IMG/VR virus record: IMGVR_UViG_3300033997_000243
Coordinates: 1-64,000 of that record
Direction: 5' to 3' (one strand)
DNA length: 64,000 bases
The notes under the pieces are model-generated. The model was not told the DNA's origin and made no database searches. It saw only the letters and a list, made by a program, of their open reading frames with translations. The number at the start of each line of letters is the position of its first letter. The stretch's first letter is position 1. This document shows positions 1-13,648 of this stretch, piece by piece. Both the position numbers and the translations under genes were made by a program.

Positions 1-420
1 AAGATCTCAAGGCATTTGAATTAGCCCACAGCGATCAGTGGAACAGATCATAAAAAGGCGGAGGTCTGCCTAAAATTTGCCTTCGTCAAATTAACAGGCC
101 AGATCTTTTTTTTTTTTTTTTTTTTTGAGGTGGAAAATGAGATCAGTAGAAAAGCAAAGATCTGTTTATTAATTGTTTGTTGGGGATCTGGGCATGGGGA
201 AATTGGATCAAGATCTTAAATCTACTACGTAGATTAAGAGCTGTACTTCGCTCCGCTTCGTACAACCTTAAAAGCAAACGAAAAAGCAAACATACTAACT
301 GGGTTATTGATCTTTTCCAGGATCCTTTTTCCGGTTCCGCCGCGCCGACCTTTCCCCTCACCAACTTTCGCGGACACCGACAACCCGCAGCCGCGCCTTC
401 GCAGCTTCTTCAATAAGGAA
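1..420. other. Non-coding GATC-dense region, candidate replication origin
   Basis: 11 GATC sites in 1-324, a T21 run at 106-126, a hairpin at 214-239, three AAAAGCAAA copies and two GCCGCGCC copies. No convincing gene. Confidence 0.4.
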
Positions 421-425
421 AACTT

Positions 426-860
426 ATGTACAATGACGAAACCTGTAAGCAATTAATCGAGCTTCAAAAGCTTGTCCATGATGCCAGACCAAAAGGTAAA
501 AAACGTGTTGAATTTGAAGAATTCAACCAACTTTTTAATGATCATCCAGAATTATTTTGCATTGGATTGACTAATAGGATATACCTATACTGTAAATATC
601 TTGATAGGCAAGTTCAAGATAGTTTTATAGAATACGTAAATCAGTCACATTCCAAACGAATACCACTAAAGAAAAAATTCCAATATAGAACAGCTTCTGA
701 GAAACGAGGTAAATTTCAATTTGTAGTATTTACTGAGCATCCAATTAAAGATAGTGGCTGGTATGTTTTTGGATTGAACACAGAATTTGCTATGGTTTCA
801 AAAGAAATGATGGATAAGATACAGTCCATTAAAGTCTCTTTTCTTAAAAACCAAATTTAG
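426..860 (+). CDS. Hypothetical protein (144 aa)
   Basis: ATG preceded by TAAGGA RBS; no recognisable motif. Confidence 0.75.
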   Translation: MYNDETCKQLIELQKLVHDARPKGKKRVEFEEFNQLFNDHPELFCIGLTNRIYLYCKYLDRQVQDSFIEYVNQSHSKRIPLKKKFQYRTASEKRGKFQFVVFTEHPIKDSGWYVFGLNTEFAMVSKEMMDKIQSIKVSFLKNQI

Positions 861-3111: not shown

Positions 3112-3120
3112 ACTGTAAAT
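3112..3120 (+). promoter_or_regulatory. ACTGTAAAT putative phage promoter element
   Basis: The same 9-mer recurs just upstream of gene starts at 6643, 10014 and 28199. Here it is 28 nt before the clamp loader ATG. Confidence 0.55.
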
Positions 3121-3148
3121 CCTAGTGTATAAACCTAGAGGATTTACC

Positions 3149-4303
3149 ATGTCTAAAAAACTTGTCAGTAAGAAACCCAAAACACTCGAAAGTTACAACC
3201 TTCCTGAAAAATACCGTCCAACAAAACTTTCTGATTATATTGGTCAAACTAGCGCTCAAAATACAATGAGTGGTTGGCTTGAGCGTAAACGCTTTCCCTC
3301 AACAATTTTAATCAGCGGTTTAACTGGTAGTGGAAAGACCACGCTTGCCAAAATGATAGCGCGTTACGTAAACTGTGAAAAGAATACAGCTTGCGGTAAA
3401 TGTGATGCTTGTAAATTCTCTGATGACCAAATTCCAGATTTAATTGAAATCAATGCTGGTGAAGCTGGTAACATAGATGACATTCGCAATCTGTTACAAC
3501 GCGCAAAACGTACACCCCGTTTTAACAAACAAATCATTTTGATTGACGAAGCCCATTTACTTAGTGATAAAGCTGAAAGCACTTTGCTGGTTCCACTAGA
3601 AAAGCCGAGCAAAAACTGCATCTGGATTTTATGTACTACTAATCCAGAAAAACTTAAGAACACAATTCGCAATCGCTGCACACACATAACGCTTAATCCA
3701 ATATCAGCCAAAGAAGTTTATGCTCGTTTAGAGATCATTGTGAGAGAAGAAGGTCTTAAGATTAAAGACAAAGACTTATTCAAAAAATGCCTTAAGCGTA
3801 TTGCCGAACTTTGTGAAGGCCAGATGCGTAATGCAATAAGTATGTTGGACACATTGATCAGCATTGTTTCAAGTGGTAACAAATATGATGAAAGTGTTGT
3901 CAGCGATCTTGGTATGCAAGCAACTGAAGAAGAATTGAATTCTGTTTCTGCTGAAATACTTGTTGCAGTTCTTGGTAACAATTTGTTGGGTATCGTTAAA
4001 AACTGCAAAGGTTGCAAAGAACCTCGTAAACTTATTTCACAACTGCGTTATCTTATTGACTGGCAAATTGAAAGTATTACTGGCATTGCAAAATATGTTC
4101 CAGCCATTGGTAAACTTTTTGTTTCGTCCGTTAATAAAAACAAGGTAAAAGTTTCGTTGCCCGCTTTGTTAAAAGTTCAATCTGTTTTACTTGATGTCGA
4201 TCACAAAATCTTAACGGTTCCGGCTTATCCTGCGGCTGTTGCACTTTATACTGCATTAGCTGATTTAAGTGTTGACGACTATTTTAACAAGGTGAAAAAA
4301 TGA
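3149..4303 (+). CDS. dnaX: Clamp loader AAA+ ATPase, DNA polymerase III gamma/tau-like
   Basis: PEKYRP, Walker A GLTGSGKTT, Zn module C...CGKCDAC, Walker B IDEAH and SRC-equivalent IRNRC. GAGG RBS before ATG 3149. Confidence 0.9.
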   Translation: MSKKLVSKKPKTLESYNLPEKYRPTKLSDYIGQTSAQNTMSGWLERKRFPSTILISGLTGSGKTTLAKMIARYVNCEKNTACGKCDACKFSDDQIPDLIEINAGEAGNIDDIRNLLQRAKRTPRFNKQIILIDEAHLLSDKAESTLLVPLEKPSKNCIWILCTTNPEKLKNTIRNRCTHITLNPISAKEVYARLEIIVREEGLKIKDKDLFKKCLKRIAELCEGQMRNAISMLDTLISIVSSGNKYDESVVSDLGMQATEEELNSVSAEILVAVLGNNLLGIVKNCKGCKEPRKLISQLRYLIDWQIESITGIAKYVPAIGKLFVSSVNKNKVKVSLPALLKVQSVLLDVDHKILTVPAYPAAVALYTALADLSVDDYFNKVKK

Positions 4304-12509: not shown

Positions 12510-13536
12510 TTGGCATTTTGATGGTCTGAAAAATCATTTCCCTTCCGACCACGCTGACCGCATAGGATTTGAAGTAGAAAAAGTTTACAAGTACGCTGTT
12601 AAAAAGGCAATTCCTTATATTATTGTTGCTGGTGACATAAGCGACAGTTATAAAATGACTGCCGAAAGTATTCAAAAACTTATTGCTGTCTTGAGTAAGT
12701 ACGACAACCACGTTACAACTTTTTACTTGATGGGCAATCACGATTACGGTGATAACAAAACTTCTAGCCTTAGTATCTTTCAGACTATGGTTGAGTTTAA
12801 AATGCTTAAGAACTTTGTGGTTGTAGACCAAAGAGAAATTCGCAAAATTGGTGGAATAGATTTTAATTTCTGCCCATTTCCGTTTACTGAACTGCTGCCT
12901 TCTGATAAACCAGTTGTGAACATAATACACCGTGATGTTCAAGGTGCTGTTGGTGACAATGGCCGCGAATTAAAAGTAAAAGAAGCACTAAAGGTCAATA
13001 GCCAACGTGACTTCACTGTTAGCGGCCATATACATCTGAGACAGTATCTTAAAAAACTCAGAGTCCTTTATCCAGGCGCTTTATTTCAAAAAACCTTTGG
13101 CGAAACACTACCTAAAGGTTTTGCTGTTGTAAAATACAAGGTCAAGAATGGAGTGATGAAAGCTGATTGGGAATACGTAGATAATATTCCTAAATTTAGA
13201 TTGGAAACTGTTCACATAGCAAATCAGAAAGAATTCGCAGCTTTGCGCGTAGATCCAAACATACGCTATAGGCTTTATGTTGCTGACGGTATTGTTGTTC
13301 CTGCAAAACTAAGACAAGATGTTCCAAACATTGACCAGCTTTGGGGAGTTAAAGGTAAAAAGCTTGAGGCTGATTTGGACTACGACCAAAACTTTTTAAA
13401 AGAAGTTAGCGAACTTCCAAAGATAGATCCCATGCTCGGCCTGAAAGATTTTTATAAAACTAATAAACTAAAAAAGGAAGATTTTCTTTTTGGAAAGAAA
13501 GCAGTTACTGAGGCACTCCGAACTTTAGGCTATTAA
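12475..13536 (+). CDS. sbcD: SbcD/Mre11-like nuclease
   Basis: HTGDWH, AGD, GNHD, GHIH and YPGA...QKTFGE motifs; partner SbcC upstream. Confidence 0.9.
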   Translation: MSREVQVIHTGDWHFDGLKNHFPSDHADRIGFEVEKVYKYAVKKAIPYIIVAGDISDSYKMTAESIQKLIAVLSKYDNHVTTFYLMGNHDYGDNKTSSLSIFQTMVEFKMLKNFVVVDQREIRKIGGIDFNFCPFPFTELLPSDKPVVNIIHRDVQGAVGDNGRELKVKEALKVNSQRDFTVSGHIHLRQYLKKLRVLYPGALFQKTFGETLPKGFAVVKYKVKNGVMKADWEYVDNIPKFRLETVHIANQKEFAALRVDPNIRYRLYVADGIVVPAKLRQDVPNIDQLWGVKGKKLEADLDYDQNFLKEVSELPKIDPMLGLKDFYKTNKLKKEDFLFGKKAVTEALRTLGY

Positions 13537-13648
13537 AAATATTTAAAATATTTTATTTTTATTTTTATAATAGTAATTTTAAGGTAAGAGGATTGTGAGA
13601 GATTCTCGTGGAGAGTAATTAATTTAATTTCAAAAGTAGAGGTCTATT

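What the first reader, a model, noticed from the sequence alone, without database searches (positions are those of the whole stretch)
1..420. oriC-like non-coding region with 11 GATC sites, a DUE-like 13-mer, a hairpin and local G/C asymmetry
Seen: GATC at 3, 33, 46, 102, 141, 159, 185, 206, 212, 309 and 321, against about 1 expected by composition. GATCTGTTTATTA at 159 resembles the E. coli oriC 13-mer GATCTnTTnTTTT. A hairpin TCTTAAATCTAC-TAC-GTAGATTAAGA spans 214-239; the + strand is G-run rich before it (182-206) and C-rich after it (about 330-410). There are three AAAAGCAAA copies and GCCGCGCC at 339 and 390. Established: gammaproteobacterial oriC has dense GATC clusters read by Dam and SeqA. 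Inference: a phage origin or terminal/packaging region, possibly regulated by methylation or acting as a SeqA sink.
Basis: partly seen in the sequence, partly recalled or inferred. Interest (0 to 1): 0.65.

Follow-up and report, generated by a model that had tools for sequence, protein, structure and literature searches.

The report
Conserved GATC-dense control region, jumbo phage
The flagged stretch is half of an 880-base gene-free region, kept at the same place in a whole clade of giant phages, that holds a phage promoter, the genome's densest cluster of Dam methylation sites and mirrored hairpins, and is most likely the phage's replication origin or replication-control region.

Summary
All 11 GATC sites, the hairpin, the AAAAGCAAA copies and the G-to-C skew switch are present. 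Position 1 is not a genome end. The record is a 319,518-bp circular assembly with a 127-bp overlap, and an independent contig carries the junction internally. The true unit is about 880 bp (record 318937-319391 plus window 1-425), the largest gene-free gap in the genome. It holds 15 GATC, 13 of them within 420 bp (next best in the genome: 8).

It lies in the replication/recombination module, with primase, resolvase, SSB, RecA and sigma upstream and the clamp loader downstream. The gap is syntenic in more than 10 relatives, including PaBG and NCTB.

Conserved parts:
- a terminator
- a phage promoter-like motif firing rightward
- a domain enriched in bare GATC (18/kb against 1.6/kb upstream, seven lineages)
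- an inverted pair of arm-plus-hairpin units around a centre with a T21 tract
- a GC-rich block

The phage encodes a T4-Dam-like methylase.

Best reading (about 0.45): a transcription-fed, methylation-sensitive origin. Rivals are a structured non-coding RNA or leader, a P1-like pac site, and an invertible switch. The oriC 13-mer likeness is at chance level, and there are no DnaA boxes. No raw reads were available, so termini and copy number remain untested.

The parts
1..425 (.). Right-hand 425 bp of an approximately 880-bp gene-free region. The left 455 bp are record positions 318937-319391, outside the window. Window 1-127 is repeated at the record end.
   Evidence: Junction contiguous in independent contig L003.
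3..324 (.). Eleven of the fifteen GATC sites of the cluster. The selected unit is the bare tetranucleotide, with no extended consensus.
62..70 (+). AGGTCTGCC box, the counterpart of the AGATCTGCC box conserved in relatives L016, L017 and L020 and of GAGGTCTACC in L023.
106..126 (+). T21 tract, the only homopolymer of 10 or more in the 319-kb genome. Relative L020's contig ends in a T21 run, and NCTB's record starts beside an A37 run. It is also the place where the assemblies break.
102..162 (.). Facing pair of GATCT-plus-T-rich 13-mers: 102-114 on the + strand (perfect match to GATCTnTTnTTTT) and 150-162 on the - strand (1 mismatch).
   Evidence: (inverted repeat I10)
159..173 (+). It is unique in the genome and recurs exactly in relative L021.
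173..185 (+). Right inverted-repeat arm. It is complementary (12 of 13, with one G-T) to record 319349-319361, 202 bp upstream. The arms co-vary in relatives.
   Evidence: (I12)
215..240 (.). It mirrors a palindrome at record 319308-319322 in the left unit.
242..264 (+). Right unit hairpin: 5-bp stem around a conserved TTCGC..GCTTC core. An inverted copy lies at record 319278-319306. There are 11 instances in 4 phages, with different stems and a conserved core.
   Evidence: A related core is present in the L023 and PaBG gaps.
150..290 (+). Three AAAAGCAAA copies, at 150, 270 and 282.
301..420 (+). GC-rich (55-68%), C-skewed block with CGCG-type words just before the next gene. A GC-rich block closes the gap in the 7 relatives inspected.
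426..860 (+). First gene after the gap (144 aa, no family). It is weakly similar to the C-terminal part of the 258-305-aa protein that follows the gap in relatives.
3125..4303 (+). Clamp-loader (DNA polymerase III gamma/tau-like) gene, which marks the replication module downstream. It is preceded at 3112 by the promoter-like motif.

Best explanation
The finding is the right half of a single-copy, approximately 880-bp non-coding control region in the replication/recombination module of a 319-kb Lupandier-group jumbo phage. It is most likely the phage's replication origin or replication-control region.

Proposed working (only the sequence features are shown):
1. A phage-type promoter (ACTGTAAAT, record 319176, + strand), of the same class that precedes the primase, clamp-loader, SSB and sigma genes, transcribes rightward into the region.
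2. Transcription helps to open, or to prime, a centre that holds the T21 tract.
3. Two inverted arm-plus-hairpin units flank that centre. The conserved hairpin core therefore lies on the minus strand to the left and the plus strand to the right, which is the lagging-strand template of each diverging fork. There the hairpins could act as primase or helicase entry signals.
4. The dense bare GATC sites are methylated by the phage's own T4-Dam-like enzyme. Passage of a fork leaves them hemimethylated, which marks the region as 'just fired', as at oriC and P1 oriR.

Shown: anatomy, uniqueness, conservation, genomic context and the methylase gene. Inferred: transcription, methylation, unwinding, priming and any origin activity.
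For: Size and position:
- It is the largest gene-free gap of the genome.
- Its arm and box motifs are single-locus; the 9-mer hairpin core has three other copies in the genome.
- It holds the only long homopolymer of the genome.
- It holds the genome-wide GATC maximum.

Context:
- PD-(D/E)XK nuclease, DnaG-like primase and RuvC-like resolvase lie just upstream.
- RecA, SSB and sigma lie 9-13 kb upstream.
- The clamp loader lies 3 kb downstream.

Conservation:
- The gap (0.5-1.5 kb) is syntenic in L016, L017, L020-L024, L032-L034, NCTB, Yoloswag and PaBG. The flanking protein is only 35-69% identical across these.

Promoter-like motif:
- There are 34 exact copies in the genome. About 22 sit 16-64 nt before gene starts in the gene's orientation, although only 4.7% of the genome is non-coding.
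- The motif is present in 7 of 10 gaps, with 1-mismatch forms in two more.

GATC:
- Density is 18.2/kb downstream of that motif against 1.6/kb upstream, over seven lineages.
- GATC is the first or second most over-represented 4-mer in six gaps.
- The flanking bases match the genome background, so the bare site is what is kept.
- A Dam-family methylase is encoded, whose best solved relative is T4 Dam.

Inverted units:
- The arms change sequence together between phages.
- All 11 hairpin instances fold, with at least 6 different stems around a conserved core.
- NCTB's gap has three 16-nt direct repeats spaced 47-48 bp next to an A37 run, a classic iteron-plus-A/T-tract look.
Against: - There is no direct evidence of initiation. 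All public runs are stored as contigs, so copy-number gradients and ends could not be read.
- GC skew turns at every gene-strand switch. Its global minimum is 1.4-5.7 kb away from the element, so the skew tracks transcription and does not locate an origin.
- The region is not the most AT-rich spot of the genome.
- No recognisable initiator was found. The adjacent 385-aa protein models as a beta-sandwich with no solved relative.
- There are no DnaA boxes beyond chance.
- G000 itself has only short direct repeats.
- NCTB and Yoloswag encode a Dam-family enzyme but show no GATC enrichment in their gaps. PaBG has neither.
- In L016, L017 and L021 each right-hand unit ends in a + strand terminator-like hairpin. 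This fits discrete RNAs as well as it fits an origin.
Confidence: 0.45

Rival explanations
1. The region encodes a structured non-coding RNA, or a long regulated leader. In this reading a transcript of roughly 450-640 nt, started at the ACTGTAAAT motif, folds through the long-range arm pairing and the hairpins. It then controls expression of the downstream operon or acts in trans. GATC methylation would tune the promoter or the region at the DNA level.
For: - The promoter-like motif is directed into a stretch with no ORF for 633 nt.
- Folding is stronger than in shuffles: z = -5.8 (L017), -3.4 (L016), -2.6 (L021) and -2.4 (L003, 98% identical to G000).
- The arms and hairpin stems co-vary.
- L016, L017 and L021 carry two + strand terminator-like hairpins each, 3-6 such sites per gap on both strands against about 1 in shuffles.
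Against: - No Rfam family matches.
- The z-score is the same on the opposite strand (-5.8), so the signal comes from inverted repeats and is not strand-specific.
- Sub-windows of G000 are not significant (z -0.3 to -1.7).
- G000 has no strong terminator before the next gene.
- An RNA role gives no reason for enrichment of a bare palindromic DNA methylation site.
- Arm copies look exchanged between positions (L021's first right arm resembles L016's), as repeated DNA sites do.
Confidence: 0.2
2. The region is a headful packaging initiation site (pac) whose cleavage is gated by Dam methylation, as in phage P1.
For: - The locus is unique and carries a dense GATC cluster in a phage that encodes its own Dam-family enzyme.
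- Established knowledge: P1 pac holds seven GATC-containing hexamers and is cut only when they are methylated.
- Three assemblies (G000, L020, NCTB) break in this region.
Against: - The breaks sit exactly at the homopolymer, which is enough to explain them. The junction is internal in L003 and in all long relatives.
- The GATC sites share no hexamer consensus.
- TerL and portal lie about 62-68 kb away, and no terminase gene adjoins the gap.
- The flanking genes are replication and recombination genes.
- The promoter, the mirrored hairpins and the GC-rich block are not features of P1 pac.
Confidence: 0.12
3. The region is an invertible (phase-variable) segment. The 13-39-nt inverted arms would be recombination sites, and the roughly 190-220-bp centre would flip to switch a promoter.
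For: - Inverted arms flank a short centre in G000, L016, L017, L021 and L022.
- On the gene-sense strand the homopolymer is T in G000 and L020 but A in NCTB.
Against: - No recombinase or invertase family was found among the 17 neighbouring genes scanned.
- G000 and L003 have the same orientation, and no contig shows the flipped form.
- The arms are imperfect (73-93% complementary).
- Three relatives carry two right arms in tandem, which does not fit a simple switch.
Confidence: 0.05
4. The region is an assembly artefact, a true physical end, or a host-derived chimera at the start of the contig.
For: - The window starts inside the region.
- The record carries a 127-bp terminal repeat that ends one base after the T21 run.
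Against: - The same sequence is internal and contiguous in an independently assembled 214-kb contig at 98% identity.
- Gene order across the junction is the same in more than 10 relatives.
- Public runs from seven studies hold at least part of the stretch.
- A 127-bp overlap is what a k=127 de Bruijn assembler leaves on a circular path (own knowledge, not tested).
Confidence: 0.02

Closest known systems
E. coli oriC (Dam/SeqA-controlled chromosomal origin)
   Same: Very dense bare GATC: 13 in 420 bp here against 11 in about 245 bp at oriC. GATCT-plus-T-rich 13-mer-like words are present. A flanking promoter reads into the region.
   Different: There are no DnaA boxes beyond chance. The phage has no SeqA gene. 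The inverted hairpin units, the T21 tract and the GC-rich block have no oriC counterpart.
Phage P1 oriR (Dam-dependent, iteron-type origin)
   Same: It is a phage element whose origin carries clustered GATC and needs adenine methylation, in a phage with its own Dam. NCTB's syntenic gap has three spaced direct repeats next to an A/T tract.
   Different: G000 has no clear 17-22-bp iterons. No Rep-like initiator was recognised next to the gap. There are no DnaA boxes.
Phage P1 pac site
   Same: It is a unique site with a GATC cluster and a phage-encoded Dam.
   Different: No TGATCA/G hexamer consensus is present. The site is not in or beside a terminase gene. Cleavage was not testable.
Transcription-primed origins (T4 oriF/oriG, ColE1 RNA II, T7 primary origin)
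   Same: A promoter of the class used by replication genes points into a non-coding stretch that holds an easily melted tract. G-runs (182-206) would lie in the transcript.
   Different: Promoter activity and R-loop formation are untested. Those origins have no GATC cluster and no mirrored hairpin units.
RSF1010 oriV ssiA/ssiB (paired single-strand initiation hairpins on opposite strands, next to AT-rich and GC-rich blocks)
   Same: Two copies of one hairpin type lie in inverted orientation, one per strand, beside A/T-rich and GC-rich segments. A primase gene is close by.
   Different: There is no sequence likeness. The primase here is DnaG-like, not RepB'-like. Recognition is untested. This comparison is recalled from the literature and was not tested here.

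Membership tests
oriC-type DnaA-dependent origin | Cluster of GATC sites far above background | tested here: met
   13 in the best 420-bp window against a maximum of 8 elsewhere in 319 kb. P = 8e-7 against local composition.
oriC-type DnaA-dependent origin | Several DnaA boxes (TTWTNCACA) | tested here: not met
   No exact match. Three 1-mismatch matches in 880 bp against 2.9 expected from the genome-wide rate.
oriC-type DnaA-dependent origin | Three tandem AT-rich 13-mers GATCTnTTnTTTT | tested here: not met
   Matches lie at 102 (+, 0 mismatches, part of the T run), 150 (-, 1 mismatch) and 159 (+, 2 mismatches). They are not tandem on one strand. Two-mismatch matches are at chance level in the window (56 against 71.6).
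oriC-type DnaA-dependent origin | GC-skew switch at the origin, independent of gene orientation | tested here: inconclusive
   The global cumulative-skew minimum is at 313.7-317.5 kb, 1.4-5.7 kb from the element. Every turning point coincides with a gene-strand switch.
P1 pac-type Dam-gated packaging site | GATC embedded in a repeated hexamer, in two groups around the cut region | tested here: not met
   The bases flanking 84 GATC sites in seven lineages match the genome background. G000 contexts are mixed.
P1 pac-type Dam-gated packaging site | Phage-encoded Dam methylase | tested here: met
   PF02086 match at 120920-121651(-), 100.9 bits. Best solved relatives are T4 Dam structures, E = 2.5e-25. 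The TIGR00571 score (109.5) is just under its cut-off of 114.85. GATC specificity is inferred.
P1 pac-type Dam-gated packaging site | Site lies in or beside the terminase genes | tested here: not met
   TerL is at 254.4-257.1 kb and portal at 251.4-253.1 kb, about 62-68 kb from the element.
P1 pac-type Dam-gated packaging site | Molecule ends start at the site | not testable with these tools
   All 14 runs found are stored as contigs. No ends or depth steps can be read.
Iteron-type phage/plasmid origin | Three or more spaced direct repeats of about 17-22 bp | tested here: inconclusive
   G000 has only 9-14-nt two-copy repeats. NCTB's syntenic gap has three 16-nt repeats spaced 47-48 bp. L016, L017 and L021 have one left and two right copies of 25-39-nt arms.
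Iteron-type phage/plasmid origin | Adjacent initiator (Rep) gene | tested here: inconclusive
   The always-adjacent 385-aa protein (phrog_21298) has no Pfam family. Its model (pLDDT 75) has a beta-sandwich and no PDB match at E <= 0.001. The downstream 144-aa protein has no family.
Transcription-primed origin (T4 oriF/G, ColE1) | Promoter reading into a non-coding unwinding region | tested here: inconclusive
   The motif evidence is strong: 22 of 34 copies lie at gene 5' ends, and one lies at 319176(+) with no ORF for 633 nt. Neither promoter activity nor unwinding was measured. T21 is the only candidate tract, and the region is not the genome's AT maximum.
Paired ssi-type hairpins (RSF1010-like) | The same hairpin on opposite strands flanking the start region | tested here: met
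   The left copy (record 319278-319306) is the inverse of the right copy (window 242-264). There are 11 instances in 4 phages, with varying stems and a conserved core.
Paired ssi-type hairpins (RSF1010-like) | Recognition by the cognate primase | not testable with these tools
   A DnaG-like primase gene lies 3.4 kb upstream. There is no binding test.
Described RNA families (Rfam 15), tRNA, tmRNA | Covariance-model or ARAGORN match | tested here: not met
   The only match is a chance-level one (E = 0.53) in G000 and there is none in five relatives. No tRNA or tmRNA was found.
Invertible promoter segment (inverton) | Inverted repeats, both orientations present, and an invertase nearby | tested here: inconclusive
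   Inverted repeats are present. Only one orientation was seen in G000 and L003. No recombinase was found among the neighbours. No raw reads were available.

The most novel reading that the evidence does not exclude
The gap is the first defined replication origin of the Lupandier group of jumbo phages. It would be a composite type not described before. A phage-sigma promoter primes or opens a T-tract centre. Mirrored hairpin units on the two lagging-strand templates load the phage's DnaG-like primase and helicase. A domain of bare GATC, written by the phage's own T4-Dam-like enzyme, acts as a fired/not-fired mark.
Probability: 0.25. Interest if true: 0.7.

Novelty: new variant of a known kind. 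Interest (0 to 1): 0.55.

Why it matters
Replication origins of jumbo phages are essentially unmapped. The papers found on this clade (PaBG, Lu11, NCTB and the Erwinia and Dickeya phages) do not mention this gap, which is left unannotated in PaBG's record.

A single, conserved, easily recognised non-coding element inside the replication module gives a concrete place to test several things in cultured relatives:
- marker-frequency sequencing
- methylation calling
- transcript-end mapping
- deletion of the element

It also explains why metagenomic assemblies of these phages tend to break, and to be 'circularised', at this spot. The cause is a long homopolymer, not a genome end. In addition, it yields a clade-wide promoter-like motif that is useful for annotating these genomes.

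Tried and rejected
- **Near-identity DNA search of phage records.** No match.
- **Rfam and tRNA scans.** Nothing found.
- **Sigma-70 and terminator consensus scans of G000.** Only the terminator after the upstream small ORF was found.
- **RNA folding of G000 sub-windows.** Not significant. The full-length fold is modest (z = -2.4).
- **Reads.** All runs are contigs. The tool itself skips the T-run as a repeat, so contig breaks there prove nothing. No molecule ends, no joints and no flipped form were seen.
- **GC skew.** It follows gene orientation.
- **AT-richness.** The genome minimum of stability is at 13.5 kb, not in the element.
- **DnaA boxes.** At chance level.
- **Phage MutH and SeqA.** Absent.
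- **Pfam terminase models.** No match. TerL was found instead by tblastn with PaBG's protein.
- **The 385-aa neighbour as initiator.** The fold gave no support. This is no evidence against DNA binding.
- **CsrA-sponge idea (GGA inside GGATC).** Rejected, because the GATC flanks equal the genome background.
- **NCTB's gene upstream of the peptidase.** It is not homologous to the 385-aa protein. The true NCTB homologue lies at the record start.
- **Profile search with 40 sequences.** It was repeated with 10 sequences.
- **Link between Dam presence and GATC enrichment across relatives.** It does not hold for NCTB and Yoloswag.
- **Shared CTTCGCT-type core.** Present only in G000, L016, L023 and PaBG, so it is not universal.

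Full report
**What the window is.** The window is the first 64 kb of a 319,518-bp virus record whose first 127 bases recur at its end. I take a 127-bp overlap to be what a k=127 de Bruijn assembler leaves on a circular path; this is my own knowledge and was not tested. An independently assembled 214-kb contig (L003, 98% identical) carries the record's end and start as one uninterrupted internal stretch. Position 1 is therefore an arbitrary cut and not a molecule end. The overlap ends one base after a run of 21 T. L003 reads T22 followed by garbled G's, so length heterogeneity at this homopolymer is the likely reason why the graph was cut there. By protein similarity the phage belongs with PaBG, Lu11, NCTB and the Erwinia and Dickeya jumbo phages, called the 'Lupandier group' in PMC7412058.

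**Check of the observation.** All eleven GATC positions are correct. GATC is over-represented throughout: 341 in the window against 169 in shuffles, and 4.98/kb genome-wide. About 2 sites, not 1, are therefore expected in 420 bp. The cluster is still the extreme of the genome, with 13 in the best 420-bp window across the junction against at most 8 anywhere else, and 0-3 in the other large gaps. The hairpin (215-240), the three AAAAGCAAA copies, the two GCCGCGCC words, the G-rich then C-rich asymmetry and the GC-rich block are all real. The likeness of 159-171 to the oriC 13-mer has two mismatches and is no better than chance.

**True extent.** The upstream gene block ends with a 69-aa ORF and a terminator hairpin at record 318944-318966. 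The next gene starts at window 426. The gene-free region is thus 318937-319391 plus 1-425, about 880 bp, and is the largest in the genome. It holds 15 GATC. The finding covers its right half.

**Context.** Upstream lie a PD-(D/E)XK nuclease, a DnaG-like primase, a RuvC-like resolvase, a conserved 385-aa protein of unknown function and the small ORF. RecA, SSB and an RpoD-like sigma factor lie 9-13 kb upstream. Downstream come a 144-aa ORF, a peptidase and the clamp loader. TerL, portal and DnaB lie 60-68 kb away.

**Conservation.** Homologues of the 385-aa protein (35-69% identical) led to contigs with the same gene order. All of them keep a gene-free gap after the small ORF:

| Relative | Gap length |
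|---|---|
| L016 | 1,150 bp |
| L017 | 1,142 bp |
| L021 | 998 bp |
| L020 | at least 674 bp (contig ends in a T21 run) |
| L022 | 909 bp |
| L023 | 824 bp |
| L024 | 757 bp |

IMG/VR relatives L032-L034 show the same. Among isolates and published genomes:
- Yoloswag has 500 bp.
- NCTB has about 712 bp, and its record start sits beside a run of 37 A.
- PaBG has 1,478 unannotated bases.

The papers found do not discuss this region.

**Anatomy, from alignment and repeat analysis.** The order of parts is:
1. A terminator.
2. About 240 bp that are almost free of GATC.
3. The word ACTGTAAAT.
4. A GATC-rich domain. It contains a left unit (a hairpin with a conserved core, a palindrome, then an arm starting CCCC), a centre of roughly 190-220 bp (a conserved AGATCTGCC-type box and T-rich sequence, which is T21 in G000 and L020), and a right unit that is the inverse of the left one.
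5. A GC-rich, C-skewed block before the next gene.

In G000 the arms are record 319349-319361 and window 173-185. The right unit is duplicated in tandem in L016, L017 and L021.

The arms differ between phages but stay complementary within each phage: 13 nt in G000, 28 nt at 93% in L017, 39 nt at 90% in L021, and about 35 nt of quite different sequence in L022. All eleven hairpin instances fold, with at least six different stems around a conserved core. A related core recurs in the L023 and PaBG gaps. In G000 the arm and box motifs occur nowhere else (the 9-mer hairpin core has three other copies), and T21 is the only homopolymer of 10 or more in the genome.

**The promoter-like motif.** ACTGTAAAT occurs 34 times in the genome. 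About 22 copies sit 16-64 nt upstream of start codons in the gene's orientation, although only 4.7% of the genome is non-coding. The genes they precede include primase, clamp loader, SSB, sigma and the methylase. The copy at 319176(+) points into the element, and the next ORF is 633 nt away. The motif is kept in 7 of 10 gaps, with 1-mismatch forms in two more.

**GATC.** Over seven lineages the density is 1.6/kb between the terminator and the motif and 18.2/kb from the motif to the next gene. GATC is the first or second most over-represented tetranucleotide in six gaps. The positions do not align between relatives. The flanking bases match the genome background. What is conserved is therefore the density of the bare site, which is the signature of a reader of GATC itself.

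The phage encodes a Dam-family methylase whose closest solved relatives are T4 Dam structures. It encodes no MutH or SeqA. The link to Dam is imperfect. NCTB and Yoloswag have a Dam-family gene but no enrichment, and PaBG has neither.

**RNA or DNA?** From the motif to the first terminator-like hairpin, the relatives fold better than shuffles: z = -5.8, -3.4 and -2.6, and -2.4 for the G000-like L003. The opposite strand of L017 scores the same, so the signal comes from the inverted repeats and does not name a strand. In L016, L017 and L021 each right unit ends in a + strand terminator-like hairpin, which argues that + strand transcripts end there. G000 has no strong terminator. No Rfam family matches.

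**Interpretation.** The following fit a replication origin or replication-control region best:
- a single-copy, position-conserved locus inside the replication module
- a promoter of the replication-gene class reading into it
- a bare-GATC domain together with a phage Dam
- mirrored hairpin units on opposite strands
- an A/T homopolymer
- a GC-rich block
- in NCTB, three spaced direct repeats

I put this at about 0.45. The mechanism given under Best explanation borrows from oriC and P1 oriR (methylation state), T4 oriF/G and ColE1 (promoter-fed opening or priming) and RSF1010 ssiA/ssiB (paired hairpins). These are resemblances recalled from the literature. Membership in oriC and in P1 pac fails on tested features: DnaA boxes, the hexamer consensus and the position of the terminase.

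The main rival is a structured RNA or leader (0.2). Next come a P1-like pac site (0.12), an invertible switch (0.05) and an artefact or physical end (0.02). The rest is unassigned.

**Limits.**
- No raw reads were available. The single read-laying run used 5,901 bases, within the operators' limit, and returned only contig pieces, which stop at the homopolymer that the tool itself skips.
- GC skew follows gene orientation.
- The element is not the AT maximum of the genome.
- The 385-aa neighbour gave no informative fold.
- The host is unknown. Runs from seven studies hold at least part of the stretch: subsurface runs hold most of it, and wastewater runs hold smaller shares.

Noticed in passing
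whole record G000 (window 1-64000 included): GGATCC occurs only twice and CGATCG not at all in 319 kb, although GATC itself is about 1.4-2 times over-represented. This looks like avoidance of BamHI- and PvuI-type sites. One of the two GGATCC copies is at window 320-325, inside the element.
   Followed up: no
window 13531-13570: A 40-bp stretch of 100% A+T, the most AT-rich spot of the whole genome.
   Followed up: no
whole record; in the window at 589, 3112, 6643, 10014, 20590, 28199 and 51332: ACTGTAAAT is a clade-wide promoter-like motif. There are 34 exact copies, and about 22 sit just upstream of genes in the gene's orientation, including primase, clamp loader, SSB, sigma and Dam. The phage encodes an RpoD-like sigma factor at record 309343-310341(-).
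   Followed up: partly
record 254419-257073 and 305952-308051 (outside the window): The TerL and RecA matches are each split into two pieces about 0.5-0.7 kb apart. Inteins or introns are likely. The PaBG paper reports inteins in terminases of this group.
   Followed up: no
record 301670-303392 (outside the window): The only tRNA of the genome, Gly-TCC at 302921-302995(-), lies between the second and third largest gene-free gaps (685 and 439 bp). Both have ordinary GATC counts and no promoter motif.
   Followed up: no
L029:8154-9630 (PaBG KF147891.1 116153-117629); L026 and L004 (NCTB record start): Published genomes carry the syntenic gap unannotated. PaBG's is 1,478 bp, with repeated GTTCGCTGGCGCTCAC words and an A-rich tract. 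NCTB's has three 16-nt direct repeats spaced 47-48 bp next to A37, and the record's first base lies beside that run.
   Followed up: partly
L015:8062-9219 (record 317561-318718): The 385-aa protein that always precedes the gap has four invariant cysteines (C61, C63, C168, C171), a disordered middle and a confident C-terminal beta-sandwich. It has no Pfam family and no solved relative.
   Followed up: partly
L016:8140-8190: Relative L016 carries a CTTTT microsatellite of a dozen or so units inside its gap, where G000 has unrelated sequence.
   Followed up: no
window 330-365 compared with L003:5440-5465: The C-rich block is the one part of the element that differs by indels between G000 and its 98% relative. 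A wastewater contig carries insertions at the same place.
   Followed up: no
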